A DNA stretch of 63,214 nucleotides, the filler included, from Octopus bimaculoides (lineage: Eukaryota), in assembly GCF_001194135.2 (NCBI RefSeq). It is 6 parts of 6 records of this genome, joined end to end, with 100 filler letters (N's around TTAATTAATTAA, not from the genome) between each part and the next. Parts side by side here need not be neighbours in the genome. Positions count along the whole stretch, not along the records: positions 27,091 to 51,222 come from NC_069000.1; 5 more parts are not named here. One strand, written 5' to 3'. The translations under genes were made by a program, and so were the position numbers. Under the pieces are notes generated by a model that was not told the origin of the DNA, searched no databases, and saw only the letters and a program-made list of their open reading frames with translations. This document shows positions 27,091 to 51,222 of the stretch, piece by piece; within the stretch, counting starts at the first letter, position 1, and each line of letters opens with the position of its first letter.

Positions 27091-27101
27091 TATTATTATT
27101 A

Positions 27102-27139
<38 letters not shown>

Positions 27140-27153
27140 GTTATTATTGTTAC

Positions 27154-27199
<46 letters not shown>

Positions 27200-27455
27200 G
27201 TTATTATTATTATTATTATTATCGTTGTTGTTGATGATGCTGATGTTGTAATTACTATTATTATTGCTCTTGTCATTGTTGTTATTATATTTATAATTGA
27301 TTCATTGCTATAATTACTATTATTGTTATAATTATTGTTGTTGTTATTAAGGTAGCAAACTGGCAGAATCATTAGCATGCAGGACAAAATGCTCAGCGGT
27401 ATTTTGTCCATCGCTGTGTCCTGAGTTCAAATTCCGCCAAGGTCANNNNNNNNNN

Positions 27456-27495
<40 letters not shown>

Positions 27496-28009
27496 AATAT
27501 AAGGGTAAAAATTATTAGAGAATTATTTACCAGTGGCTAGCATGCGTAATAAGAGTCAAAAGACATAAATTATTTTAAAATATAATGGTGTATGAAACAT
27601 ACAAGAAGAGACAACCACCATGTGGATTTCTTACATACTTAAAATGGCAGTCAAAGCCTAAAACCATGAAAGAATATCGTTATATTAAAGCGTGTTGATT
27701 TGTATGTGAGCATTCACTCAGATATCTTGCTCGCATACAAATCAATGTGCTTTAAGTCCTGGGGTTGATTTGTTCAACTAAAAGCCTTCAAAGCAGAGCC
27801 CCAGCATAGCTGCAGTCAAAATGACAGAAACAAGTAAAAGATTAGAATTTATTATTCCTGTTCTTCTTTTTAAAATTCCTTCACATTGTGTCAAGCTGTA
27901 CCATGCCTAATATTTTTGTGAGCCCTTAATTGTTGAAAATAAAACACTATTATTAGTGTCATTATTGTTGTAATTATTGTTACTATTATTATTATTATTA
28001 TTATTATTA

Positions 28010-28050
<41 letters not shown>

Positions 28051-28064
28051 GTTATTATTGTTAC

Positions 28065-28122
<58 letters not shown>

Positions 28123-28151
28123 GTTATTATTATTATTATTATTATCGTTGT
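27091..28151. repeat. Long (TTA)n/(TTG)n microsatellite arrays with an intervening SINE-A head (27350-27445)
   Basis: Directly visible trinucleotide arrays at 27091-27345 and 27945-28151. Confidence 0.95.
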
Positions 28152-28460
28152 NNNNNNNNNNNNNNNNNNNNNNNNNNNNNNNNNNNNNNNNNNNNNNNNN
28201 NNNNNNNNNNNNNNNNNNNNNNNNNNNNNNNNNNNNNNNNNNNNNNNNNNNNNNNNNNNNNNNNNNNNNNNNNNNNNNNNNNNNNNNNNNNNNNNNNNNN
28301 NNNNNNNNNNNNNNNNNNNNNNNNNNNNNNNNNNNNNNNNNNNNNNNNNNNNNNNNNNNNNNNNNNNNNNNNNNNNNNNNNNNNNNNNNNNNNNNNNNNN
28401 NNNNNGTAATCGACTTATACCCTCCCCCAAAATAGCTGCCCTTGTGGCAAAATTTGAAAC

Positions 28461-28499
<39 letters not shown>

Positions 28500-28514
28500 A
28501 ATTATTATTATTGT

Positions 28515-32679: not shown

Positions 32680-33632
32680 ATGGGTCCACCAGAGCATATA
32701 TTGGGAGGTATGGCCATTATAGCCTTCCTTTCTCCACCCCATCACACTCCTCTCTCATGCATTCGTACTCGCCTTCTTTCACCATATATTCTACAATTCT
32801 GCTCTAATAATCTAATGGCACTTATTTGCATACAGGGCCTGCAACTTTCTTTATTATTATAGTTTTGCTTATAATACTGACGAAGTGAGTCAAGGGCATA
32901 GTGGAGCCTACCAGCTTGTGTAATAATGGTGGTTGGCTTGCTGAAAAGTGTACACTACATATAGCATAAATACCAGTTATGCTTTCTGTGTTTCTTTTAT
33001 TTGGCACAAACTCCACATAGTAGACTATCTGTAGTTATGATGGTTATTGTCACAGTACATCAAACAGCAATGGAATGTAGAACTTATCTACAGTACCCAA
33101 ACCTTTTGGTATTGTGTCATACATTCCAGTGCATCTATCTATTTCTTCATACCTTCTAAAGTACACTGCAAATGTTATACCCTTCTCTGGGTCATAACTG
33201 AATTCTCTTATAGAGTTCGATATGCCATCTGGCAAAAACAAACTTATAGTGTTTCCGGACTTCTTATGACATAGCTCCATTAACTGTTGTTGTTTTTCTT
33301 GTTGCTGAAGTAGTTGTTTCTGCAACTCCTGTTGCTGTTCTTGCTATTGCTTTTGCAACTGTATCATAGAAGCTAACAGGTCTTCCATAATTAACTTTGT
33401 ATCACAAAAATTTGTTAAGTGATCTGCATGAGCTTCTTCAAATCCTCATCACCAATATTGTTGTCTCATCAATTGTTATGATGATGATACCTTTCTACAC
33501 TATAATCGTGTATTAGCAATGAAATATATAATGAAGCAGATAACAACAATGTAACAATCCGACAAACTCTCCACAAGCTATACATGAACCAACAAACAAT
33601 ATTCTGACAAACTATCAAAACAACACCTTACA
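32680..33632 (-). mobile_element. 5' part of a Ty3/Gypsy element: putative 5' LTR 33459-33632, PBS 33440-33454, decayed gag from ATG 33388
   Basis: TGTAAGG...ACAACA termini. PBS TGGTGATGAGGATTT resembles a CpG-decayed TGGCGACGAGG. gag reads MEDLL..QQQ..ISNSIREFSYDPEKGITFAVYFRRYEEI. Confidence 0.8.
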
Positions 33633-33639
33633 ACTTCCT

Positions 33640-34290
33640 GTGATTAATGCCCTGTGTCCTTCTGAAGATCTTCAAGCACTTCCTTGATTTTGGTCTTATT
33701 GTTACAGGCAGAGCAAGTAGGTGTCTTTCTTAAATGCACCCCACACATAGTAACCCATGGGATTACAATGAAGGGAATTGGAAGACCAGAAATATTAGGG
33801 CTGATGAAGTCGTAGCAATTCTTCAACATCTACTTCTGACTCTTTCTGGAAGTATAGTAAGGTATGTGCTGCCACACATATGGCCTTCCACTAGCAATCC
33901 TCCCTAGCCAGGGTTTGACCACAGTTTCTAGCAGATTCCTATAGCCATCTGAATTGATCCTATGCCTCTGTTCAAAGAGATGGGGTACTATGACATCACC
34001 TTCACTGGAGACAAATCTAAAGACCATCACAGTTTAGGGGAACTTAGTTTTCATGATGTCTATGTCATGTCTTACAGCTTTTACAGCGTTCACAGAGCAT
34101 TGAGCTGCAATCATGATATCAGCATTTTGATACCCAATGTGAATCTTCATGATATAAGTCACTCATTTCTAGTATTCAGATGGCGTCTAGTCCTCCATGT
34201 CAGTTAACTCTTTTTCAACTACAACTTCAATCTGTATGCTCTCCAATGCCCTTGACTGTTCACCAATACATAAAAGCTGTTCCTTGAAAA
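33640..34290 (-). mobile_element. IS630-Tc1-mariner (maT/DD37D-like) transposase remnant
   Basis: MVFRFVSSEGDV..INSDGY..LETVVKPWL..GRPYVWQ..TSRKSQK, followed by a decayed SP.N..P.D.YYVWG-type region. Confidence 0.78.
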
Positions 34291-34591: not shown

Positions 34592-37083
34592 CATATATAT
34601 ATGTATGCATGTATGTATTTTTATATTTATATGTGTATGTATATGTGTGAGTATATCTCCTGGAGTATGTAAGAGCTGTAAATGAGTGTCACTGTCATAC
34701 AAGCAGTGTTATTCTTTTCCAGTGTTTCTGGGGAGACATGTCTAGCCATGGATAAATATTACCTTGCTTGGAAACAGGTGTTGTTTGGTAACTGGGAGTG
34801 TATCCAGCCATAGAAAATTTACCTCAGTAAACTCTGCCCTCCACATGCAAGTGCAGAAAAGTAGATGTTAAAGCAATGATGATTGTTATGATGATGATGA
34901 TGATGATGAAGATGAGGATTTTTTCCGAACTTGGTGATTCCGTTCATTGCTACTCTGAGTTTCTTGCTTGATATAATCCTCATATGACAACTAAACAGGG
35001 TGCTCCAGTATGAATCACCCATCTTTCTGCAAGTAAATATACTGTACATCATCATGTACATCTCATTTGTAAAACCAAAAAAATGTGATGGGTGTGTGTG
35101 TGTGTGATTTAAGAAATATTTTCTACTTAGATTTCAATAAACTGTTTGACATGAAATATCAGAAGTTTTGAGGGGTTTATTTATTTATTTATTTATTATT
35201 AATTATTATTTATTTATTTTTTGCAAAACCGAAATATCTCATTACTGTTTGTTTCCCACAACTCATTTTGTTTTTCAGATCATCAGCATTTTTTTTCTTT
35301 ATCTTATCTGGTGTTGAATATATTTTTCTCTTATTAATATCCCTCGTTAATATTGTTAGACTTGACTGGAGACTATGCGAAAGCAACGAGACTCACCTGA
35401 GTTATATGGTCTTATCTTAGTACATCACTATTCTCTATTTAAACCTTATCTGGGCTGGGTTAAAATAGTTATCAATAAATTACTTTTATTCTTTATATCA
35501 ACTTATAATAATATAAGTAGTCTTGAAGGAAATCCTTGATGTTCAGTGTTAATATATTCACTCGTTTAAATTGTCATTTTACGAAAATGGCTGAAATACT
35601 CCTAATTAACATTTAAATGACTTATTTTTTTTTTTAAATAAAGAGTAAAACATCTGGAATAAAATGGAAATATTGCTTTTGGGTGGCTGGAATGATTAAT
35701 CAATCATTATAGATAGTGTACATTAACTGATGATACTTATCCACTCTGACTTAATCCCAATAAATTGTGATCCAATACTTGGCCGCCTACTGCATTTGCT
35801 CGTATCACATAAATAGTGTGAACGATTGAAATTTGTAGCACAATAAGATTACAGCTACTACTGTTGCTGCTGCTGCTGATACTGCTGTTGTTACTGCTGC
35901 TGCTGCTGCTGCTGTTGCTACTACTTCTAATATTATTGCTCTGTCATTGCTGCTGTTACTTTTTCTACATCATATTGATCGAATGTCATGTGACCTGGTA
36001 TCTGGCCTGCAGCTCAATATTAGACCAGTATTTCAACAAACATCTAGCTATTTTCAGTGAAATACCTAGAATCTCCAGTTCTTCCAACAATTGCAAAACT
36101 CTGCTTTCTCGTCACATCTGCATCAATATCACTATGGCTTTGTAAGTTGCTTTTTACTCAGTAGTGTTTTAATTCATTTTTAAATTGTTATCTATTTTAG
36201 ACACCAATGCACACTTAAGAGTTACAGGTAAATTCTGCTAAATGCCGGCTCCAATTGCATTTCTTTCTCTCTCTCTCTCTCTCCCCAACCCTCTTTGTCC
36301 ACTCTATATTTTGCTATTATTTCTATGTATTGTAATTATTGACGTTACTATATTACTTGCATACATATATTTATCCATCTTTACCTCTCTTTCCTGAGAG
36401 CTCTCTCCAGGAAGGTGACCTTGCAAAAGGAAGAAAATAGATTTTTCCCTTTTTTTTTATATTTCTTTTCTTTTTTTTATGAATCATCCAAAGTTGTACT
36501 CCGAATCATCTCAGGAGTTCTTCCAAAGCTTAACATTTCACAAAAAAAAATACAGAGTAATTTTACCTTTCAAAATTTCATCTCTCCTCACCCTTTTCCT
36601 CAGCCCCTCCTTCTACTCCTAAATTACATTTGATTAAATTTCATACAAAACACCAAACTAAATGCCTTACAGAATTTAGTTTCATCCCTTTATGTCCCGA
36701 GATCAAATCCTAGTGAGGTCAAATTCGTCTTTCATTCTTCAATAAGGATAATTAAATACCAGTTATATAATGGCATAAATTTAATATCCGTGCACATCTC
36801 CATCAAAAACTGGCACTGTGTCTAGTCAAAAGAAATCACTACTATTATTGATATTTATTCATTTATTCACTTGCAGATGAAGAAAATTTCTCATGCAGTG
36901 ATATTCAGAATTAAGACGATTGTCTGATAAATTTACTGAAGAAATAAGAAAAAGAAATAGAAGGGAGGATGACAGAGAAAAGAAACGAAAAAGCAGTGAT
37001 TTTATTTTATTTTTTTTTGTNNNNNNNNNNNNNNNNNNNNNNNNNNNNNNNNNNNNNNNNNNNNNNNNNNNNNNNNNNNNNNN

Positions 37084-37285: not shown

Positions 37286-40120
37286 GTCACTCTCTTCTCC
37301 CTCCCTCCCCCTCTCTCTCTATCCATCTCCGTCTCTTTCTCTCTATTCGTCTTACCCTGCTAGCCTAGCTTCTTTCTCTTCTAACATTCAACAGTGTTTC
37401 CTCAACTGCCAGAGAAAATAAACATTACAAAAGATTTTAGAATAGCTTTTATAATTAATCCTAATCATTTCAATGCAAAACAGTAATAAGAGCTTCATAG
37501 TGTGTGTGAATGCATTTGCACATACACACTTACACACACACACACACATATTTATGAGTGCTGTGTGTATGTGTATGGATGTATGTATATGATATGGTAT
37601 CTATAATGTATCTATGGATACATATATGTATACATGTATGATATGTATATTTGTGTGTATGTGTGTGTGTTTATGCATGTATAATAAATGTATAATGTGT
37701 GCTATGTTCAGCTTTTAACCAGTCAGTAATGGTTCTCTAATCGATCTTTGTGAACTATTTTTGATTCTTGATGATTTTGTGTAGGTGTTAATGAAATCAT
37801 TCACACAAGTATTAATATTGCTTTCTGCCAAACTCCCATATCATTTTCCTCTCGTGCAAAAATGACATTCAAGGTTCATTTACTTTGTTACTATATACAC
37901 ACATACATATACATATATATACACACATACCCACACATATATCTAAATAATAATACGCACATTATATATATGCCTATATATATATATATATTTACATGTT
38001 TGTGTGTGTCTGTGTCACACAGATCTCAGACTATAAAAAAACCTTTTTTACGTTTTTAAGCTTTTGAACTGGAAGGAAATTATTATCAAGATAATTTACT
38101 GATTTATTGACTTCAATTTTTATTCTCTTCAGCCAGAATTTACCATGGGATTTCTTGGATTAAGTGGATTTTTTTTGCTAAGACTTGAAGGCAACTATCA
38201 AACCTATGACAAGTACAAAATTAAATTCCTGGTATAAAGTTTATGTCAATTACACATCAAAGCTTATAATAAAGCATTTGTTTCTTAAATTCTAAAATTT
38301 GTTTCATTCGTTTCTTAAATTTTATTCTAATTTCCATTTTATATTCACCAATTTATATAATTAGTTTTATTTCACTAACTTGTGTTACACATTGTTCACT
38401 AATAGGTAGAATGTATGCAAAAGGGGTAAGGATTTATTTGTTAATTTTCTCACCTATCACAACATCCCAAATTGCATTCAAGCACATGATGTAGAATATG
38501 ATGAAACAAACACTTTTCACCTATTTCTCTCACCTATTGTAGTGTTGACTTCAAGGAAGATAAATGTTGGCTGTTCAGTATTGCAGCCAGCTGCAAGGTT
38601 CATTGACCTGAGATGAGTATTTGTAAATGGTTTGCAACTATAAGATAACAGTAATAATTGTTTAAGTATTTTAGATGTTTTATCTAAACATGATACAATC
38701 ATGTGAAAACAAATCAATGTCACAGCTGTAAAAGAGATTAAGGCATACAAATTCTCGTAAATAAATGTAGAAGTTTTGTTGGTCCTTTGGGAATAAGAAA
38801 ACCAAAGAGGTGTATGTTGCTGAACTTGTTAAATAAAACAAAGACGAATGTTTTAGGCAGAGATTTTATTATATGTAACAATATACACAGCTCATTTAAA
38901 TTTTGAATCATGCTTATACTGACCATTTTCAGTCTCTTGTTAAGTTTGTATGTCTGTAATATAATCCGTAACTCAGAGTTTAAGACATGTTTATTTGTCT
39001 TTCTACTTGCAGTTTGCAGTTCATCGTTACAAATGAACAATTCATGTTGTACATATACTGGTGTAGGATTGGTGAAGTTTTGGCTAAGCAAAGCGAAATT
39101 AGATGTTTATAATATTCAAATACATTAATTTATAACATTAAAATATGCGTTGAGCATATATATCCTTATTATAAATAATTACTGTTGGAAAATCAAGACA
39201 AATATATGTGTGCTCTAATCATACTAGAATTAGCTAAGGTTTCCATTAGGGTAATATATCATCTTGGGACAACAGTTATTCCAGGTAATGATTGCTTCCC
39301 TAATATTTTATTCAGATCTAGAGTTTCCAAGTTTGGTTCTTTTTCCTAGTTGATCTGCAAAATACTACTACTACTACTAATAATAATAATAATAATAATA
39401 ATAATGATAATAATAATGATAGGCACAATAATATGAAAGTGTTTCAAATGTTGGCACGAAGCCTGTAATTTTAAGGGATGGCAGCCTAGTTGATTACAAA
39501 AGTAACCAGAACATTATTTTCCTAATTTAATTTCATCAGTTTATTTATCATATTATTATGTGCAACATAACAATCTATAAAAGGTTGAATATATTTTTTT
39601 ATGTTTCCCTTCGAAAGCATGGTTCAATACCTTATTTATGAGGTCACTCTAAATATGAGGCTAATTTATTCCTTGTTTTTTTTTTTTGTTTTGTTTTTTA
39701 TCTGCTACTGAAACCAGTTTTACTGATGCAATTGTCTTGATATTTGTTCAATAATGCTGGAATATATCGGTTTTTTTTTTACTATTATATTTGCAGCAGC
39801 CTAATAAGAAAAGCACATTTTGAGATTTTTAGTCAAGAATATTTTTAAACACTAACTTCTAGTCTCTATGATGCTATCCAGTATTTCGAAGGAGTTTCCC
39901 AATGGCAGAGTATATGATTGTCTTCTTAGAAAAATTGGAATATCTTTTGGTTATTCTTATTCATTTATTTGTGTTAGATGTCAGGACAATTGACAACACA
40001 AACTGTTTGGATTAGGGCAAAGGATCTTTTTGCCCCCTATGATATATAAATATACATACACACACAAATATATATACACATGCACACACATAGATACATA
40101 TACATACAAACACATATACA

Positions 40121-40162
<42 letters not shown>

Positions 40163-40579
40163 NNNNNNNNNNNNNNNNNNNNNNNNNNNNNNNNNNNNNN
40201 NNNNNNNNNNNNNNNNNNNNNNNNNNNNNNNNNNNNNNNNNNNNNNNNNNNNNNNNNNNNNNNNNNNNNNNNNNNNNNNNNNNNNNNNNNNNNNNNNNNN
40301 NNNNNNNNNNNNNNNNNNNNNNNNNNNNNNNNNNNNNNNNNNNNNNNNNNNNNNNNNNNNNNNNNNNNNNNNNNNNNNNNNNNNNNNNNNNNNNNNNNNN
40401 NNNNNNNNNNNNNNNNNNNNNNNNNNNNNNNNNNNNNNNNNNNNNNNNNNNNNNNNNNNNNNNNNNNNNNNNNNNNNNNNNNNNNNNNNNNNNNNNNNNN
40501 NNNNNNNNNNNNNNNNNNNNNNNNNNNNNNNNNNNNNNNNNNNNNNNNNNNNNNNNNNNNNNNNNNNNNNNNNNNNNNN

Positions 40580-40664
<85 letters not shown>

Positions 40665-41637
40665 ATGTATGTATGTATATATATTTTTTAGGCAGGACAA
40701 AGGCAGTGTCCATGACACTTTACAGGACCATTGAGCCTGGTGAGAGGGAGAAAGGAAGGTGTTGTCAAACTGGAATCATGGCCCAAATATTTGCAACAGA
40801 GTGGACTCTACTGATGGCACCCAAGAACCGGGTATTAACTGATTTAGTTTGTGACCCAAGTAGACCAAGGCAGGACTTGAACTCAGAATGCAACCAGTTT
40901 GAACAAATGCTGTCATGTATCAGGTCTGATGCTCTTACTTCTGCCAATTCACTACTGTAGACTGGTACTTTGTTATTAACTCTAAACTCAAAAGTGGATA
41001 CTGCTGTGTGGGGAAACAGAGGATCATGATTGTTCCTGTTCTACCATGTCTGCAGTGTGCCCCCAAGAATGATAAAAATATTCACAGGTGGTGGTATTTC
41101 ATTGTTGTAGATGTACATGATACTACAACCATTATAACAAAAGTCACACTTTCTGTTTATGGTTTCAAAAAGTTTGCATCTTCACTTTTGCTGAGAAAAA
41201 AAGAAAGGCAACTAAAACAGAAAAAATACCCATACACCAAATTTTATAGTGACAAATACTTCTGCAGCATGTGGGTCTTTCTCTAAATGTCTGAAAATAT
41301 TAAACTAGTGAGAAATAAACAAATAACAAATTTAGCCATTGTCTACAAACACTGCAGTTCTCAAGAGTAACCTTCTTCCATGTACATTTGCATAATTATG
41401 CAAATACTGATATATATATATATATACACTTGCATAATTCAATTGGATGGTGATTGTCCTAAATTCTTCCACCATTTAGCAGAGTTTGTATTTCATTCTG
41501 CAGTGTCCAAAAATTAACCTCCTTGTCATGTAGGGTCAGTAGAATTTTGGTGGGAGTTACCCGTTTAGTCTCCAACAGTTTTCCCATGTAACAGGTTTGT
41601 AGTGGGTTACATGTTGCCAGTAGCATTCACAAGTAAC

Positions 41638-42658: not shown

Positions 42659-42724
42659 GGTAACAAGATATTGTTGCCAAGTCAATGGTGTGTCATTGCT
42701 GACAGGCGGAGGTGATTTCTTAGA
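42659..42724 (+). other. 5' UTR part of the first coding exon of the KIAA0513-like gene
   Basis: Strong acceptor TTTTTCTTTCTCTTTCATTTTTCAG ends at 42658 and an in-frame stop lies upstream of the ATG, implying at least one upstream non-coding exon. Confidence 0.7.
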
Positions 42725-45519
42725 ATGGATTTAGGATTTTTTGGTAAAAAAGTTCCTGGAAATCCAGTTGGTGCCGGATTTGGATCGAGTTTCTTTGCAG
42801 GAACATCCAACTTTCTGAATTCTGTCACTGCTAAAAAGGACGGAATATTTAGTGATTTGTCAAATAAAGTTGACTCATTTATTAAAGGAGAAGAAATACC
42901 AGCAAATGTTGGGCAACCTGCCTTCAACAGAAATCCTCCGCGAAATGTACCACCACAACATCCTACTGCACATGGCCAACAGCGTCCACTTGGTTTTCCT
43001 CCAATAGTTCCAGGAAGCCAACCACGAGGGATAACACCACAACAAGGGTTTCCACCTGTTCTGCCAGATCCCAAATTAGCTCGGCAACAAGGTATACCCA
43101 CACCACGAATTGGTGTTCCTCTAGGACTAAAGGCGACACCCCCTCCAACAACTAGTCTCCAAAGCAAACCTCTAGATAAAGTTGATATTTCAGCCACTCG
43201 CAGAGATCTTAAAGACCCTGTTTCTGAAAGAAATGATGTAAATATTCCTCATGATGAAGCTCAAAGAGATAGCAGTTTATCTGAGAGTTCTCAATCAAGG
43301 TTAGCTTCTAGCCAAGTCAAACCTGGCCAGAAAGCTGGACCCCAAACCCAAGGTCAGCCTGGACAATATCAACAAAAGACTGGTGAACGACCTTCTCAAA
43401 AATCAGCTGCTGACAGGCAGAGAACTTCTCCTTCTGCTGAACAAACCCTAAGGTCATCTCCAACTCCAGCTGAAAGACAAAAACTAACTGACCGGCGAGG
43501 TCAAAGACCAGGAAGTTCACAAAGTGACCGCTTGGGACAAGGTCAGAAATCTACTCCACCTTTAACAGAACGACAACAACAGAAAGCTCATTCTGAAAGA
43601 CAGGGACAAAGGTCATCACCTCAACCAACAGAACGCCACAGTCGATCATCTCCACCACAAGGCCAGCGAGCAAAACCAGAACCAGAACGTCGTCTTTCAA
43701 GATCAGGACAAGAACTAAGTATCACTGAACGACAAGGTGTACGGCAAGGACAGGAACCAATAGAGCGTTTTCGTGACCAACGATCAGGTGGGGAACCAAT
43801 AGCTCGTCGTACATCACGAGGTAGTCAGGAACTTACTGAACGTCATAGGTCTGGACAAGATCTAACTGACCATCGAGGTCAAAGAATTAGTCAAGATTCA
43901 TTAGAAAGGTATGGACCTAAAGGTCAAGAGATATTAGACAGACAGAGATTAGAATCTTTAGATCATACTGGTAGGCAAATTCAAAGATCTCAGGACCCTC
44001 TTGACCGCCATCAAAGGACAACTTTAGACCAATCAGAACGTCATAGGATTTCTGATTCATCAGACCCACATAAAATTAGTTTAGGTGATTCTCGAGGTTA
44101 TTCGGAATCTATAGATCGATATTCACAACGTACAACACCTGCTGCTCAGACAAGATCCGGTCAAGATACAAGTCATCGTCGAAGTGAAAGATCGTCTCCA
44201 ATACCAGCTCAAAGGCGTAGCCAAAGATCATCTCCAGAACCTTTGCAGCGGCGTAGCCAAAGATTAGATCAGGAACATGATATTACTACAAAATCAGGAT
44301 CAACCCTTAGAAGCCAAAAATCTACAGAATTCCATAGTCAAAGAACAATACCAGATGGAGCAGATCGACATAGTCACCGTTTAGACAGAGATTCCCTTGA
44401 CCGATATAGTCAAAGATCAATAGATGATTCTTCAGATCGTTATGGACTGAGGGGAGACAGGGAAATAGAGCGATATAACCAGAGATCAATTGAAGAATCA
44501 GCTTCCCGGCAGGGCCAAAGAACAGCACCCCCTCTCTCCTCTCGCCAGCGATCAAGTTCAGATTACTATGACCAACACTCATCACCAGAACCTGCTGATC
44601 GACCTCGAGTTTCACGGCAAACTCAAAGAGTAGCTGATGATCCAGAACGTAGTGTTCTTAGATCCCCATCATCTGAGGCTGAATATTACCATAGTCACCG
44701 GCCAGCCCCTCCCCTCCCTGATAAACATACACAGAAAGTAGCTCCCGAACCAACCAGACGGCAATCTCAAAGGACTGATAGAGAATCTGATTACTACCGT
44801 CACAGATCTGATCACGGTATTGCAAAGCCAACACCCATTCCTGCTGACCGTCATCGATCTGCTTTTAAACCAATTGAACGACCTGGCCGGAGATCAGCAC
44901 CAAGATTAGGCGAATATAGTGATCGAGAGTCGACTGAACACCAGCAGCGAACTACTGCAAGTGGTAGGTTATCAGAACCATCAGAGCGAATTCTTCGATC
45001 ACCATCGTCTGAAGACTTAGAGCGAGAAATGGATGAAAAAAGAGGAGGGAAATTTGCCTCAGGGCGTCGCCGATCTAGTACAGTTGATGAAATGCTGTTT
45101 GATGATTACGTTGAGCCACCTGAAGATCAGACTGAAGCACCAGCATCAGAAGCAGCTGAAACGGCTAGTAGACGCCGAACTCTCATGCCCATGGGAGATC
45201 TGATTTCTTTTGATGAAGAGGATCAGCGGAGAGGCTATAGTGAGAGGCGTCACAAGCCAACCGCAGCTAAAAGGAAGACTGACCGCCGTCGACTCAGCCC
45301 TGATTCTTCTGATGGGGGATATGGCGGAGAGGCTGGACGACACTCAAGCATCGATTCATCCGGAGATGAATTCGGTGGAGAGCCTTACCACCGTTCTCTA
45401 TCTATGGAATCAGAGCAGTCATGGGATTCTACTTATAGCATTGAAAGCCAGCCTGATGACATCACTCTGGAATGCATGGAGTTTATGAAAATGTTTGTAG
45501 AAAAAATATTCTTGTTGAA
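42725..45519 (+). CDS. KIAA0513: KIAA0513-like protein, first coding exon (931 codons + 2 nt; long disordered N-terminus, start of SBF2-type domain)
   Basis: Uninterrupted 2.8-kb ORF. Acceptor (pyrimidine tract + CAG ending 42658) gives an exon start at 42659; in-frame TGA at 42713-42715 precedes ATG 42725. Donor AA|GTAAGT at 45520 (phase 2). C-terminal SMESEQSWDSTYSIESQPDDITLECMEFMKMFVEKIF resembles the KIAA0513 segment before its conserved domain (recognised from memory, not searched). Confidence 0.9.
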
Positions 45520-46581
45520 GTAAGTTTAAAATTTATTACTTGAAAATTTGAAAGGAATATGTTTTTTTGTTTTTTTTTGTTTTCATTTGAGGTTTGAAAC
45601 CTTTTCTTTTCTAAATTTGGGATAAAGTAAATAGTTTTTCTGTGATTCTACACATGATGTGTAGTTAAATACTGCTTTTTAATGGGGACTTATTAAATGA
45701 AAATTAGTAACAAATTGTATTAATAACTAAAAGCTATACTTAATAATAAAACAGCTTCTAGCTAAAACTAAAGAAATAAATAGCTCCCTGAATTACAAGT
45801 TTAATGTGAATATATATTTGTTGTACTAAAGTGTTAGCATTGAAAATTCCAAGTACCAAATTTTAGTGTTGTCTAGGGAAATACTTTCTGCGTCATCCTA
45901 GAATCATACATACAGATAATTATCAAGTTTGGCATAGATTAAAGTTTCAAAATAAAGCATTTCATAACATTATATTCTATAAGTGTTAAATGAAAATGTC
46001 TTGGTGTGTTTACTGAGACTAAAGGTTTGGGGCTGAAAGTATTTTCATCTTTAGTTTTATGTATGTTTTTTTTTTTTAGCCTGGTATAGGTTACATATAA
46101 TTTATTATTGTGCATCTAAAGCCTTTGTCTAGCTGGTTGTTATTCTTTAATTTCTAACAATTTTATTAGAAACCTGTATCCATGTTATTTATATGAATAA
46201 AACAAGTATTTAAGACTAAAAGTTAATCACAGACTTGTTTAGATGAAATCTATAGTTTTTAAAAATTTTAATCTTAGATATAGTTAGATAAAAACATTTT
46301 TATATCAAAATTGTATACATTATTCATTATATATATATATATATATATATATATTCTATGTATGTGTACGTATGCATATATATGTGTGTGTGTGTGTGTG
46401 TGTGTAAAAAGGAATTTATTTATAGTTATGAGATGAACTTCAGTTTTTCTACACCACACATCCAAAAGCACACAGCAGAACTGCATTCTCATGTAGCCAT
46501 GTAGAAAATTGAATACATTTCAAATTGACTGTTTCAGTAAGTGTTAATGTAATTCATCTTTCTTTGTTTAACTCTTAATAG

Positions 46582-46675
46582 TGAAGAGATTTCTCAAACA
46601 GAGAAAGCAAAATTTGGGGAACTTTGCCAACATCAACCAGGAAGAATTTGGTTTGCCAGATATGTCAACTCTCAA
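46582..46675 (+). CDS. KIAA0513: KIAA0513-like coding exon 2
   Basis: TAATAG| acceptor and CAA|GTAAG donor. 94 nt completes phase 2 (AA+T=Asn) and reads EEISQTEKAKFGELCQHQPGRIWFARYVNSQ, matching the KIAA0513 EKARFGE..GREWFARYVSAQ pattern. Confidence 0.92.
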
Positions 46676-47745
46676 GTAAGCTTTGATTTATCATTTATTC
46701 TTATGTATTTTGTGAAAGTTAATCAATCAGTAGTTCTCTTACTTAGTGCCAATAAATTTACACCCTAGTATGTTTACTTAGTGACTTGCTCAGTAAAACT
46801 TCATCATATTTAATGCTAATATGCATGTACAATGCAGAAATTATTGATTATGCAAATGCATTAAGCACTACCTTTCAGCTCATTGCCATGGCTATTTTTA
46901 AGCACATTTCCATTGATTTTAAATGATTTCCTCTGCATGATTTTATTTGTAGTGTTTTTATTTTCCAGTCATTCAACTTTTCTTTTTATCAACATTTTCT
47001 GATATTGTAGTAACCAAAAGTAAATATAACAGCAATTCTCCATCCAGTAAGTTATATTATTTCAGAATGCGAGTTGATACAAGTATCGCTAACAATGAAA
47101 CTGATTTTCATTAGCTTATATAAACAATGGGTAATAACCACCAGTATAGAAAATGGTTCATAAATTTTATCACCTTAAGATATTTACTTTCAAAGAAAAA
47201 GCAGTGTTATCTTAGTATCAGAGTATTCATTTTTCATAAACACATATTTAGAGACTTGACATTTACTAATAAATATGTATATCTATCCTTGGTAGTTTTT
47301 CCCTTTTTTTCCCCCCATTAAACATCAATAATCTAACACCTGACATTAATGCTCATATACATTTATTATGATCCTCAATAATTATGAAATGATTGTTCTC
47401 AGAAACATTAATTCACTTTCCAAGAGAATAGCTATTGAAATATATTTAACATTAGTTAAACGGAAACTATTTTTATAAAGAAATAAATTACACTTTTTTA
47501 TCCTGTAAAATCCCTTGACAATTTACATTAGATTTTAAGCAAATATTTTTACAGTTTTCTTTTATTTAGTTAGTGGGAAGCCCTTTCAGACAGCTCTATT
47601 TATGGCTTGAGTCACACTAATTGAAATCAAAGTTTGGGTTACAATTTCACTTCAAATTGATGGTCTGAAAAAAAATAGATATGGTCTAAAGGTACACATC
47701 TGTCCAAAAATTATATATTTAGTACTCATTTCCTTCCTTTTACAG

Positions 47746-47890
47746 AGAGTGCACAACAAGAGAGTTGATGAACAGATTTTCTTCCGTCTAGTCCAATATT
47801 TCTCAGTGGTATTATTTGAATGTCACATGGCAGAGGACTATACCCCAGCAAAGTCATTAATGAATATGTGTTTCACATTTTTCTATGAAA
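47746..47890 (+). CDS. KIAA0513: KIAA0513-like coding exon 3
   Basis: TTTTACAG| acceptor and A|GTAAGT donor. 145 nt, phase 0 to 1, reads RVHNKRVDEQIFFRLVQYFSVVLFECHMAEDYTPAKSLMNMCFTFFYE, matching KIAA0513 FYRLVQSFAVVLFECH..DDFGPAKNLMTMCFTYY. Confidence 0.92.

Positions 47891-50010: not shown

Positions 50011-50012
<2 letters not shown>
49786..50012 (-). mobile_element. SINE family A flanked on both sides by (TAA)n
   Basis: Family-A core; TAA arrays at about 49760-49785 and 50013-50140. Confidence 0.85.
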
Positions 50013-50050
<38 letters not shown>

Positions 50051-51167
50051 TGAAGATAATGATGATAATAATAATAACAATAATAATGATGATAATAATA
50101 ATAATGCTGATGATGATAATAATAATAATAATAATAACGACAACAGCAACCCTAGCATCACTTTGACAACATGTTCTGCCCTCTCACTCAATAATATAAT
50201 TTCATTTTAGAAAATATCTGCTCTTCCAGCATAAAGTTTTCAAAATCTATTTTAAGTCAATACATAACCTGAATCTGTCCTACTTAATTATTTAAAGACC
50301 TGTTTACCCAAAGAAAGCAATTTTGTAACAATTATCTATTCAAGGATTTTGATGCTTAAAGACTTATATTTTAATCTCATTATTTGTACGATGTCACACC
50401 TTTCAGCAGGTTTATTTCTTCTGGTTTTATTTTTAAATGTATTTCTTGTGGTAACTCAGTCAAATTACCTGTATGTTCACTCAATCTTTTTATTCTTCTG
50501 CATTTTATAAGCAACAATTTATATGATTATTTCTTTCATTAGTAAGATCATTATTTCCAACATGATCAACATCATGATGGTCGAAATGTCAATGATAATG
50601 TATTCAGTATATAACTATGTATATGTTTGTAATTATATATAATTCATTAGACAGAAACATAAAGTGATGCATTGAGTCCCTTAGACGCAAATGCAGAATG
50701 GCTTTGAATTCAAAATTTCAAGACTAATTGATCACCAGACAAGCTCTTGATGACAACATGTCACATTCACAATCACTCTGTACTTTTGTCTAATGAATTA
50801 ATGAGATTCTACATTTGTATAAAGCCCTTATTTTGTGAGTGTTACATGTTTTTGATAGTTTTTTGTAGTAAAAAAAGCAAACTACTTACTACAATAGAAT
50901 TATGTGTATGTATGTATATATATATATATATGTGTGTGTATAAATTTGTACGTGTATATATTTGTGTGTGCAAGTATATGATAATGGTAAGAAGTGTATG
51001 TGTATATATGTTTGTATATATTCATTTATATATGTGTATAAATGTGTACATATATATATTTGTATGTGCAGGTATATGATGATGATAGGATGTATATGTG
51101 TATATGTCTGTGTGTGTATAAATATGTGTATGTATGTATGTATACATATATATATATTTACACACAC

Positions 51168-51222
<55 letters not shown>

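What the first reader, a model, noticed from the sequence alone, without database searches (positions are those of the whole stretch)
42725..45400. KIAA0513-like protein with a roughly 880-aa disordered N-terminal extension in one 2.86-kb exon
The conserved KIAA0513/SBF2-type region starts only near residue 890. Before it lies a long, stop-free R/S/Q/E/D/P-rich tract. Vertebrate KIAA0513, a poorly characterised brain-expressed protein of about 400 aa as I recall, has only a short N-terminus. An open frame this long, rich in CpG-containing Arg codons within CpG-depleted surroundings, suggests selection. Inference: a lineage-specific, phosphorylation-rich scaffold or condensate-forming arm on a neural protein.
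Basis: partly seen in the sequence, partly recalled or inferred. Interest (0 to 1): 0.7.

Follow-up and report, generated by a model that had tools for sequence, protein, structure and literature searches.

The report
Octopus KIAA0513 gene's enlarged disordered arm
This is the first coding exon of the octopus version of the poorly understood KIAA0513/Krang gene; it encodes a floppy N-terminal arm that octopus and cuttlefish have enlarged about 2.4-fold from an arm already present in other molluscs, which is a real but fairly ordinary kind of protein evolution.

Summary
Window 42725-45519 is a stop-free 932-codon frame (about 51 stops expected by chance). It lies in one 2,861-bp exon (42659-45519) that splices to 46582. 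Spliced exons 1-3 are identical to Octopus bimaculoides RefSeq XP_014788591.1/XP_014788589.1, so the gene is already annotated, under composition-driven misnomers (SRRM1-like, ZC3H13-like). It is a KIAA0513/Krang orthologue: Pfam SBF2 starts at residue 919.

The arm is real protein. dN/dS is 0.11-0.13 among octopuses. Against cuttlefish dN is 0.16 with synonymous sites saturated. A spliced cuttlefish mRNA carries the whole exon. Composition and AlphaFold indicate disorder.

"Lineage-specific extension" is only half right. Gastropods, bivalves, a brachiopod and a nemertean already have a 333-577-aa arm (median about 370), in one exon wherever exon structure could be judged. Their arms have the same N-terminal motif, the same last ~150 residues, and two probable internal motifs in the same order. 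Octopus and cuttlefish stretched the spacers between these motifs to 891-916 aa with degenerate, duplicated R/S/Q/D/E/P modules. These modules have no detectable homologue among 1.84 billion representative proteins.

The scaffold, phosphorylation, condensate and neural roles remain untested. Interest is modest.

The parts
42659..42724 (+). 5' untranslated part of the exon. Acceptor AG at 42657-58 and an in-frame TGA at 42713-15 just before the start codon.
   Evidence: The homologous stretch is kept in the cuttlefish mRNA L002 124-187, which has its own in-frame TGA.
42725..45519 (+). Coding part of exon 1: residues 1-931 plus 2 nt. Residues 1-915 are the N-terminal arm; residues 916 onward begin the SBF2-type domain.
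   Evidence: identical to XP_014788591.1 residues 1-1011 once spliced; 0 stops against 50.6 expected.
42773..42886 (+). N-terminal motif, aa 17-54 (AGFGSSFFAGTSNFLNSVTAKKDGIFSDLSNKVDSFIK). Shared with the arm of other molluscs, Lingula and a nemertean.
   Evidence: BLASTP hits to aa 16-54 in 16 other exon-1 ORFs; alignment A2; second matched stretch in the profile search.
42917..43156 (+). Proline-rich island, aa 65-144. Found only in octopus and cuttlefish, 87.5% identical between them.
   Evidence: dN 0.072 against cuttlefish; dN/dS 0.09 against O. vulgaris; no match outside coleoids.
43157..44554 (+). Repeat-derived core, aa 145-610. R/S/Q/D/E/P-rich, built of degenerate ~12-aa modules carrying [DE]R[HYFQ]..QRS(S)P. 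This is the fastest-evolving part and holds 50 of the 53 indel columns against cuttlefish.
   Evidence: over aa 145-772: 18 motif copies against 2.5 in shuffles, 0 of 2000 shuffles reach it; over aa 1-915: 119 internal window pairs scoring 40 or more against 0-7 in shuffles; dN/dS 0.21-0.24.
44187..44264 (+). The only tandem repeat still visible in the DNA: a 36-bp unit, 2.2 copies (RSSPIPAQRRSQ / RSSPEPLQRRSQ).
44483..44503 (+). aa 587-593, RSIEESA (cuttlefish RSFDEPI). Probable remnant of the mollusc N[MI]SFDEPLY motif.
   Evidence: MAFFT alignment A2: columns S588 and E591 invariant, F589 and P592 in 90% or more of sequences. This rests on the alignment only.
44555..45040 (+). Second conserved island, aa 611-772, 84% identical to cuttlefish. 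Its tail (aa 702-754, PTPIP..GRRS..SGRLSEPSE) aligns with bivalve PPIPPPP..GRRS..SSGHSSDSE.
   Evidence: (dN/dS 0.03-0.05).
45041..45469 (+). Last part of the arm, aa 773-915, shared with other lophotrochozoans. It includes RRRSSTVDEMLFDDYVEPPE (45065-45124) and MGDLISFDEED (45191-45223). Only from the latter motif onward is there weak similarity to the vertebrate N-terminus.
   Evidence: BLASTP hits to aa 718-781 through 929-931, E 1e-22 to 1e-37; invariant R782-D794, D825, L826, F829; primate alignment score 71 against a shuffle maximum of 66, marginal.
45470..45519 (+). Start of the conserved SBF2-type helical domain (ECMEFMKMFVEKIFLL).
   Evidence: Pfam PF12335 from aa 919; AlphaFold helix 912-928, pLDDT about 93.
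45520..46581 (+). Intron 1 (GTAAGT ... AG).
   Evidence: The cuttlefish mRNA joins the homologous exons directly.
46582..46675 (+). Exon 2 (EEISQTEKAKFGELCQHQPGRIWFARYVNSQ).
47746..47890 (+). Exon 3 (RVHNKRVDEQIFFRLVQYFSVVLFECHMAEDYTPAKSLMNMCFTFFYE). The remaining exons lie beyond the piece.

Best explanation
Shown: window 42659-45519 is the first coding exon of the Octopus bimaculoides orthologue of KIAA0513/Krang. It encodes a 915-residue intrinsically disordered N-terminal arm followed by the first helix of the SBF2-type domain. The arm is an enlarged version of one already present in other lophotrochozoans (333-577 aa, in one exon wherever exon structure could be judged). The enlarged arm keeps an ordered set of short conserved motifs. 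These are the N-terminal GTSxF(F/L)xSxxAKK(N/D)G(I/L)xSDLSNK, a probable SF(D/E)EP remnant, a probable PxPIP...GRRS block, RRRSSTVDEMLFDDYVEPPE, GDLISFDE, and an acidic Ser-rich run leading into ECMEFMK. In the octopus-cuttlefish group the spacers between these motifs grew by about 520-550 residues. Growth was by duplication of short R/S/Q/D/E/P-rich modules of about 12 aa (36 bp), which have since diverged. The whole arm is translated and kept by purifying selection.

Inferred mechanism: the arm is a flexible, multivalent docking and regulatory region. It would present short linear motifs and many Ser/Thr sites to partners, and so position or regulate the C-terminal helical domain on membranes of the regulated secretory or endocytic pathway. 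The expansion would add reach and extra low-affinity sites rather than a new fold.
For: Identity:
- Spliced exons 1-3 are identical to XP_014788591.1 residues 1-1011.
- That protein hits Pfam SBF2 at 36.3 bits against a cut-off of 22.1.
- The conserved tail plus exons 2-3 retrieves only KIAA0513 homologues, E down to 5e-38.

Real coding sequence:
- 0 stops against 50.6 expected.
- dN/dS is 0.128 and 0.107 against two other Octopus genomes, with dS (0.06-0.09) matching intron divergence of about 9%.
- Against cuttlefish dN is 0.157 and dS is saturated, yet the ORF is kept at 907-911 codons.
- CpG is retained only in Arg-codon phase.

mRNA: the cuttlefish transcript L002 covers the whole exon as one block, from the acceptor to the donor. 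It then joins exons 2 and 3, and has an in-frame stop before the homologous ATG.

Ancestral arm and expansion:
- The anchor motif sits at residue 333-577 in 36 non-cephalopod sequences and at 891-916 in 10 coleoid ones.
- The taxa were named.
- Both ends are homologous.
- A profile search of 1.84 billion representative proteins found no match to profile positions about 60-650 outside the coleoid cluster.

Internal duplication.

Disorder: charge-hydropathy places aa 65-915 on the disordered side. In the AlphaFold model 787 of 932 residues have pLDDT below 50, and the only confident helix is 912-928.

Sites: 17 SP/TP, 26 R..[ST] and 7 RR.[ST] sites, with the Ser/Thr kept in cuttlefish at 15, 21 and 7 of them.

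Trafficking link:
- Zebrafish krang/kiaa0513 mutants fail in cortical-granule function at egg activation (PMC11302925).
- From my own knowledge, not tested: LISFD fits the clathrin-box consensus L-hydrophobic-x-hydrophobic-[DE], and RRxS is a PKA-type consensus.
Against: - No expression, phosphorylation, binding or localisation data for any mollusc were available.
- The motif readings (clathrin box, basophilic kinase site) come from memory of consensus patterns and were not tested.
- The AlphaFold alignment is shallow (21 sequences), so low confidence is only weak evidence of disorder.
- The core (aa 145-610) evolves fastest (dN/dS 0.21-0.24, 66% identity, most of the indels). Part of it may matter only for length or composition.
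- Nautilus and squids could not be examined, so the node at which the expansion arose is not fixed.
- Octopus RNA evidence was not seen directly; it rests on RefSeq models and a cuttlefish mRNA.
Confidence: 0.7

Rival explanations
1. Passive spacer: the coleoid-specific ~530 residues are tolerated low-complexity growth in a slippage-prone hinge. Only rough length or composition matters, if anything, and the sequence has no specific function.
For: The same hinge expanded independently with unrelated repeats in Littorina (P0111, ESERQAK..EY.ARQ units), P0116 (SQQSQGGH units) and P0112. The core, aa 145-610, has the highest dN/dS (0.21-0.24) and 50 of the 53 indel columns. Its modules are degenerate.
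Against: dN/dS is well below 1 everywhere. Identity in the core is still 66% although synonymous sites are saturated. Two coleoid-only islands (aa 65-144 and 611-772) are 84-88% identical, with dN/dS 0.03-0.09. CpG-bearing Arg codons are retained while CpG at the other codon phases has decayed.
Confidence: 0.2
2. One reading: the arm drives phase separation and forms condensates, with Arg and Tyr as stickers and phosphorylation as the switch.
For: The arm is a polyampholyte: 31-36% charged residues with near-zero net charge, 15.6% Arg in the core, and recurrent DRY/ERY/DYY/EYY. It is predicted disordered.
Against: Nothing here tests it. Aromatic content is low (Y 2.2%, F 0.5% in aa 145-772) and Pro is 8%. 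Many disordered arms of this composition do not form condensates.
Confidence: 0.12
3. RS-domain or RNA-processing protein, as the RefSeq product names suggest (serine/arginine repetitive matrix protein 1; zinc finger CCCH domain-containing protein 13).
For: High R and S content. RefSeq assigned these names to XP_014788591.1 and XP_014788589.1 and to the O. sinensis models.
Against: No Pfam domain other than SBF2. There is no run of RS or SR dipeptides: 25 RS, 9 SR, none consecutive. The exhaustive profile search gave only 37 hits, and every hit inspected or named is a KIAA0513-type sequence. Both ends of the arm are orthologous to KIAA0513-like arms.
Confidence: 0.03
4. Annotation artefact: part of the open frame is really intron or 5' UTR, with a downstream start or internal splicing, or the exon is a fusion of two genes.
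For: The O. vulgaris model CAI9737802.1 splices out the first 35 codons and starts upstream. No octopus RNA reads were inspected directly.
Against: The O. vulgaris genome keeps the same ATG-initiated 930-codon ORF. The cuttlefish mRNA retains that segment and the whole exon. The first 35 codons are conserved as protein at the same level as the rest of the arm. The N-terminal motif is shared with non-cephalopod orthologues, which argues against a fusion.
Confidence: 0.03

Closest known systems
Lophotrochozoan KIAA0513-like proteins (e.g. Haliotis rufescens XP_046361837.1, 544 aa; Pinctada imbricata KAK3085349.1, 585 aa; Mya arenaria XP_052816779.1, 606 aa; Lingula anatina XP_013404477.1, 553 aa)
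   Same: Same gene family and layout. A large first coding exon, recovered as a stand-alone ORF or gene model in many molluscs, encodes a Ser-rich disordered arm. The arm has the same N-terminal motif, RRSSTVDEMLFDDY, GDLISFD and ECMEFMK anchor, followed by the SBF2-type domain.
   Different: Their arm is 333-407 aa, up to 577 with lineage-specific repeats; the octopus arm is 915 aa. The coleoid proline-rich island (aa 65-144), the repeat core and the island at aa 611-772 have no detectable counterpart.
Vertebrate KIAA0513 / zebrafish Krang
   Same: Orthologous SBF2-type helical domain: 55% identity over octopus aa 911-1010 and 1018-1125. Marginal similarity runs from GSLIDFG (octopus MGDLISFD) into the acidic Ser-rich run. 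Zebrafish Krang has a genetic role in cortical-granule function (PMC11302925).
   Different: Vertebrate proteins are about 330-424 aa with only about 90 residues before the domain. The N-terminal GTS..AKKNG..SDLSNK motif and RRSSTVDEMLFDDY were not seen in the primate sequence examined.
MTMR5/MTMR13 (SBF1/SBF2)
   Same: They share the Pfam SBF2 region PF12335.
   Different: No DENN, GRAM/PH or pseudophosphatase domain was found by Pfam in the octopus proteins. PMC11302925 notes the same for Krang.
SRRM1 and ZC3H13 (the names RefSeq gives these octopus models)
   Same: Arg/Ser/Asp/Glu-rich low-complexity composition.
   Different: No PWI or CCCH domain, no RS dipeptide runs and no sequence homology. 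The names reflect composition only.

Membership tests
KIAA0513/Krang family | SBF1/SBF2-type helical domain (Pfam PF12335) above the curated threshold | tested here: met
   XP_014788591.1, identical to the window over residues 1-1011, scores 36.3 bits against a cut-off of 22.1 at aa 919-1070. Only aa 916-1011 of the domain lie in the window; alone they do not reach the threshold.
KIAA0513/Krang family | Closest relatives in a database-wide search are KIAA0513 orthologues | tested here: met
   The 231-aa conserved tail plus exons 2-3 gave 81 hits. All named hits are KIAA0513, KIAA0513-like or SBF1/SBF2-domain proteins, best E 4.9e-38.
KIAA0513/Krang family | No DENN, GRAM/PH or phosphatase-like domains (these would make it MTMR5/13) | tested here: met
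   Pfam finds nothing else in the 932-aa ORF or in either full-length isoform.
KIAA0513/Krang family | Function in regulated secretory granules (zebrafish Krang), or neural expression | not testable with these tools
   No mollusc expression or functional data were available. The tissue of the cuttlefish run SRR8281684 is unknown.
Lophotrochozoan long-arm subtype of KIAA0513 | An N-terminal arm (single-exon where exon structure could be judged) beginning with GTSxFFSSxxAKKNGLxSDLSNK and ending with RRSSTVDEMLFDDY ... GDLISFD ... SQPDDxTLECMEFMK | tested here: met
   invariant R782-D794, D825, L826, F829 and S908-D911; G26, T27, S28, A36, K37, K38 and G40 present in 90% or more of sequences.
SR/RS-domain splicing proteins (SRRM1-like) | Runs of RS/SR dipeptides plus a PWI or RRM domain | tested here: not met
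   25 RS and 9 SR dipeptides, none consecutive; no Pfam domain.
ZC3H13-like | CCCH zinc finger | tested here: not met
   No Pfam hit at E up to 1 in the 932-aa ORF and none at E up to 0.1 in isoform X1, P0085. The arm has a single Cys, in the ECMEFMK anchor.

The most novel reading that the evidence does not exclude
The two islands found only in octopus and cuttlefish (aa 65-144, proline-rich, and aa 611-772; 84-88% identical across the deepest split within coleoid cephalopods; no homologue in 1.84 billion representative proteins) are new partner-binding modules. They would rewire an old secretory-granule factor (Krang/KIAA0513) for a coleoid-specific use, for example in neurons or other cells with intense regulated secretion. 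The repeat core would then act as a phospho-tunable multivalent tether.
Probability: 0.15. Interest if true: 0.5.

Novelty: new variant of a known kind. Interest (0 to 1): 0.3.

Why it matters
KIAA0513/Krang is a conserved animal protein with almost no known biochemistry. Its one genetic phenotype, in zebrafish, points to regulated secretory granules.

This analysis shows that invertebrate orthologues carry a long, motif-bearing disordered arm that vertebrates largely lack. It also shows that octopus and cuttlefish enlarged it about 2.4-fold and have kept it under purifying selection across the deepest split within coleoid cephalopods. The conserved motifs (N-terminal motif, RRRSSTVDEMLFDDYVEPPE, GDLISFDE) are concrete handles for finding binding partners of this family.

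Practical points also follow. The RefSeq product names in Octopus are misleading. Several mollusc gene models split exon 1 from the domain exons. The O. vulgaris model probably mis-splices the start.

Length change in disordered regions between orthologues is common, and the gene is already annotated, so the surprise value is limited.

Tried and rejected
- Pfam on the 932-aa ORF and on the O. vulgaris model gave no hits. The family assignment needed the RefSeq isoform X2.
- The first word-based homology search with the whole ORF was swamped by low-complexity candidates and returned only two clusters. The conserved tail and the exhaustive profile search were needed.
- BLASTP self-comparison gave no off-diagonal hits for technical reasons. 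It was replaced by windowed Smith-Waterman scoring with shuffles.
- PDB sequence searches with the SBF2-type domain and with the alternative C-terminus gave only chance-level hits.
- No fold search was run, because the model is low-confidence.
- Rfam and tRNA scans of the piece found nothing.
- Literature: no paper holds both KIAA0513 and octopus, and none cites the run or assembly accessions. The species and tissue of the Logan and ENA samples therefore stay unknown.
- The 171-aa minus-strand ORF at 42682-43197 was considered and rejected as a shadow of the coding exon, because purifying selection follows the + frame.
- A gene-fusion origin was considered and rejected, because both ends of the exon are orthologous to other molluscs' exon 1.
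- A check for A-to-I recoding was considered. The cuttlefish mRNA product looks the same as the A. pharaonis genome ORF by eye (no formal comparison was run), and the one difference between the two transcripts is R to C, which is not an A-to-G type change. This was not pursued.
Full report
**1. What is in the sequence**

The piece (27091-51222) is AT-rich, microsatellite-laden eukaryotic DNA with four assembly gaps. One feature stands out: an ORF at 42725..45523 (+) of 932 codons.
- The coding frame has no stops. The other five frames of the same stretch have 34-100.
- Base composition predicts 50.6 stops (P about 2e-23).
- The next longest stop-free run in the piece is 188 codons.
- GC rises to 0.42-0.46 over the ORF, against 0.25-0.35 around it.

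The ORF sits in a typical exon:
- A polypyrimidine tract and AG lie at 42657-58.
- An in-frame TGA lies at 42713-15 and the ATG at 42725.
- The donor is GAA|GTAAGT at 45519|45520.
- Two further exons lie in the piece, 46582-46675 and 47746-47890.

**2. Identity**

The spliced product of exons 1-3 (1,011 aa) is identical to residues 1-1011 of two Octopus bimaculoides RefSeq proteins:
- XP_014788591.1: 1,131 aa, 'serine/arginine repetitive matrix protein 1 isoform X2'; UniRef calls it 'SBF1/SBF2 domain-containing protein'.
- XP_014788589.1: 1,282 aa, 'zinc finger CCCH domain-containing protein 13 isoform X1'.

So the window is O. bimaculoides and the gene, with the whole arm, is already annotated.

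Isoform X2 hits Pfam SBF2 (PF12335) at aa 919-1070 with 36.3 bits against a cut-off of 22.1. A database-wide search with the conserved tail plus exons 2-3 returned 81 proteins. All the named ones are KIAA0513, KIAA0513-like or SBF1/SBF2-domain proteins.

The RefSeq names are driven by composition. There is no PWI, RRM or CCCH domain, there are no consecutive RS dipeptides, and no such protein appears in the exhaustive profile search.

**3. Is the long frame real protein?**

Four lines of evidence say yes.

(a) Within Octopus. The same ATG-initiated ORF exists in O. vulgaris (930 codons) and in a third octopus assembly (928 codons).
- dN/dS is 0.128 and 0.107.
- dS (0.06-0.09) matches intron divergence of about 9%.

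(b) Against a cuttlefish. The cluster of P0002 contains Acanthosepion pharaonis CAE1318802.1.
- The ORF is kept at 907-911 codons.
- dN is 0.157 while synonymous sites are saturated (dS about 2).
- From my own knowledge, octopuses and cuttlefish represent the two coleoid superorders, a split of a few hundred million years.

(c) mRNA. A 4,027-nt transcript contig from a cuttlefish RNA-seq run (L002, SRR8281684) encodes 1,260 aa.
- Its bases 124-2907 align as a single block to cuttlefish genomic DNA, exactly from the acceptor (ttttacag|GGTAAC) to the donor (GAA|GTAAGT).
- It then continues directly into sequence matching window exons 2 and 3.
- An in-frame TGA precedes the homologous ATG.

(d) CpG.
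- Observed/expected is 0.64 in the exon against 0.12-0.24 around it, and 72 of 121 Arg codons are CGN.
- By codon phase, CpG observed/expected is 1.03 at positions 1-2 (Arg codons, where deamination changes the amino acid).
- At positions 2-3 and 3-1 it is 0.25 and 0.39.
What is selected is the Arg residues.

**4. Where the arm came from**

Many hits are stand-alone ORFs of 360-405 aa from ENA and Logan assemblies, along with gene models from Mytilus and Batillaria. They start MDFxRRRLS...GTSRFFSSxxAKKNGLxSDLSNKFE and end ...KRRSSTVDEMLFDDYVEPE...MGDLISFDE...SWSSxYSxDSQPDDxTLECMxFMKxFVEKIF. These are the same first exon in other molluscs.

BLASTP shows two homologous blocks:
- Octopus aa 16-54 matches their aa 4-59.
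- Octopus aa 772-929 matches their last ~150 residues.

A profile of the octopus and cuttlefish ORFs was run through HMMER against 1.84 billion representative proteins.
- It gave only 37 hits.
- Only the coleoid cluster covers the middle.
- In every other hit the best-scoring stretch lies at profile positions from about 656-770 onward.
- Most of those hits have a second matched stretch; BLASTP and the alignment place that match at the N-terminal motif.

Named members are listed below:

| Taxon | Length |
|---|---|
| Haliotis | 544 aa |
| Pinctada | 585 aa |
| Mya | 606 aa |
| Sinanodonta | 464 aa, partial |
| Lottia, exon-1 model | 426 aa |
| Plakobranchus | 442 aa |
| Bradybaena | 473 aa |
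| Nucella | 414 aa |
| Littorina, exon-1 model | 593 aa |
| Tubulanus (nemertean) | 498 aa, partial |
| Lingula (brachiopod) | 553 aa |
| Orb-weaver spiders | 501 aa |

The ECMEFMK anchor lies at residue 333-577 (median about 370) in 36 non-cephalopod sequences and at 891-916 in 10 coleoid ones. The cnidarian, priapulid and vertebrate sequences examined have about 36, 180 and 90 residues before the domain.

The multiple alignment suggests that two internal landmarks are also kept in order:
- Mollusc N[MI]SFDEPLY aligns with cuttlefish RSFDEP and octopus RSIEES at aa 587-592.
- Bivalve PPIPPPP..GRRS..SSGHSSDSE aligns with octopus PTPIP..GRRS..SGRLSEPSE at aa 702-754.

So the arm is old. It is shared at least by lophotrochozoans. 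By eye a similar N-terminal motif is present in spiders, but HMMER did not score it. Octopus and cuttlefish expanded the spacers between conserved motifs by roughly 520-550 residues.

The same hinge expanded independently, with unrelated repeats, in Littorina, P0116 and P0112. It is therefore a hot spot for such growth.

**5. Anatomy of the expansion**

Composition of aa 145-772 is R 15.6%, S 15.3%, Q 10.5%, P 8.1%, D 7.6%, E 7.5%.

It is made of degenerate modules of about 12 aa:
- The pattern [DE]R[HYFQ] occurs 18 times against 2.5 in shuffles; 0 of 2000 shuffles reach it.
- Over the whole arm, 119 internal window pairs score 40 or more, against 0-7 in composition-preserving shuffles.
- One 36-bp tandem (44187-44264) is still visible in the DNA.

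Conservation between octopus and cuttlefish is uneven. The dN/dS values are the comparisons with two other Octopus genomes:

| Residues | Identity to cuttlefish | dN/dS within Octopus | Note |
|---|---|---|---|
| 65-144 | 87.5% | 0-0.09 | proline-rich island |
| 145-610 | 65.7% | 0.21-0.24 | 50 of 53 indel columns |
| 611-772 | 84.4% | 0.03-0.05 | second island |
| 773-932 | 95.0% | 0-0.05 | shared with other lophotrochozoans |

Charge-hydropathy places aa 65-915 on the disordered side, and aa 1-64 and 916-1131 on the folded side.

AlphaFold2 on a 21-sequence alignment gives a mean pLDDT of 44.9, with 787 of 932 residues below 50. The only confident element is helix 912-928, the start of the domain. 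A weaker helix is predicted at 391-410.

**6. How it most likely works**

Shown: the arm is a translated, selected, disordered region that carries conserved short motifs.

Inferred: it serves as a flexible multivalent docking and regulatory region for the C-terminal helical domain. The leads are:
- RRRSS(784/785) is a basophilic kinase-type site next to the invariant acidic-aromatic TVDEMLFDDYVEPPE.
- LISFD fits the clathrin-box pattern. Both of these pattern readings come from my own knowledge and were not tested.
- There are 17 SP/TP and 26 R..[ST] sites, mostly conserved in cuttlefish.
- Zebrafish Krang/Kiaa0513 is needed for cortical-granule function at egg activation. [quoted passage not shown]

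The condensate idea fits the polyampholyte, Arg-plus-Tyr make-up. It has no direct support, and aromatic content is low.

**7. Comparison and novelty**

The closest relatives are the lophotrochozoan KIAA0513-like proteins. They have the same exon layout and motifs with an arm about 40% as long.
- Vertebrate KIAA0513/Krang shares the domain and, at most, the last ~95 residues of the arm (marginal).
- MTMR5/13 share only the Pfam SBF2 region.

No paper in the library mentions KIAA0513 together with octopus. The Krang paper does not discuss molluscs or the N-terminal region.

I rate this a new variant of a known kind: a lineage-specific enlargement, conserved under selection, of a disordered arm in an annotated orthologue. 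It is useful for annotation and as an entry point to motifs of a poorly known family, but not very surprising.

**8. Limits**

- No octopus RNA reads, tissue data or proteomics were available.
- Nautilus and squids were not found in the collections, or could not be recognised, because Logan and ENA entries carry no organism names.
- The node of the expansion is therefore 'at or before the octopus-cuttlefish ancestor, after the split from gastropods and bivalves'.
- The motif functions are hypotheses.

Noticed in passing
window 42659-42800; L003 10329-13121: The O. vulgaris model CAI9737802.1 (P0001) starts upstream (MALVTKYCCQ...). It splices out an ~89-nt mini-intron (window equivalent 42712-42800) and so drops the first 35 codons. 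Yet the O. vulgaris genome keeps the same ATG ORF of 930 codons, and the cuttlefish mRNA retains this segment. The model is probably a misprediction.
   Followed up: yes
window 42725-47890 (whole gene): The RefSeq product names for this gene in O. bimaculoides and O. sinensis ('serine/arginine repetitive matrix protein 1', 'zinc finger CCCH domain-containing protein 13') are misnomers driven by composition. The protein is a KIAA0513/Krang orthologue.
   Followed up: yes
outside the window (downstream of 51222); P0085, P0090, P0098: An alternative isoform (X1, 1,282 aa) replaces the second half of the SBF2-type domain after ...FTFFYE with about 288 residues. These are recovered as a single stand-alone genomic ORF and end in a coiled-coil-like heptad stretch. 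Two cuttlefish mRNA contigs (1,260 aa) carry exactly this form. There is no Pfam or PDB relative.
   Followed up: partly
P0108/P0080 (Lottia), P0111/P0053 (Littorina), P0073/P0048 (Batillaria), P0117/P0068 (Nucella), P0076 (Mytilus): In several mollusc annotations the big first exon and the SBF2-domain exons are predicted as two separate genes, or the first exon is read through into the intron. Database orthologues therefore look much shorter (166-260 aa) than the real proteins (about 545-606 aa).
   Followed up: partly
P0111 aa ~225-400; P0116 aa ~195-330; P0112 aa ~240-330: Independent tandem-repeat expansions with unrelated units (ESERQAK..EY.ARQ in Littorina; SQQSQGGH; YSNxxSxN) lie in the same hinge, between the SFDEP motif and RRSSTVDEML, in other molluscs.
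   Followed up: partly
P0109 (Plakobranchus ocellatus GFO47112.1): UniRef labels this exon-1 orthologue 'WH2 domain-containing protein'. Gastropod arms have a PPPRPPPP tract followed by REKEKIIKRMxSxPAY. Nothing comparable was detected by Pfam in the octopus arm.
   Followed up: no
window 33050-34030 (-): Short broken ORFs upstream look like transposon relics. One has a sub-threshold Pfam DUF7083 match (22.9 bits against a cut-off of 27). Another has a transposase-like ...GRPYVWQH... stretch that gave a chance-level tblastn hit.
   Followed up: partly
window 27446-27455, 28152-28405, 37021-37083, 40163-40579; 27091-28512, 40042-40684, 50012-51222: Four runs of N (assembly gaps) are flanked by long TAT/TTA, AT and TA-rich microsatellites. 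These produce spurious poly-Ile, poly-Leu and poly-Tyr ORFs in the mechanical ORF list.
   Followed up: yes
window 42682-43197 (-): A 171-aa Gly/Pro-rich ORF lies antisense to the start of the coding exon. It is most likely a shadow of the proline-rich coding region.
   Followed up: partly
window 43895-43954 (aa 391-410): AlphaFold predicts one moderately confident helix (pLDDT 73-79) inside the otherwise disordered repeat core (DSLERYGPKGQEILDRQRLE). The cuttlefish sequence has Pro and Gly changes near its end.
   Followed up: no
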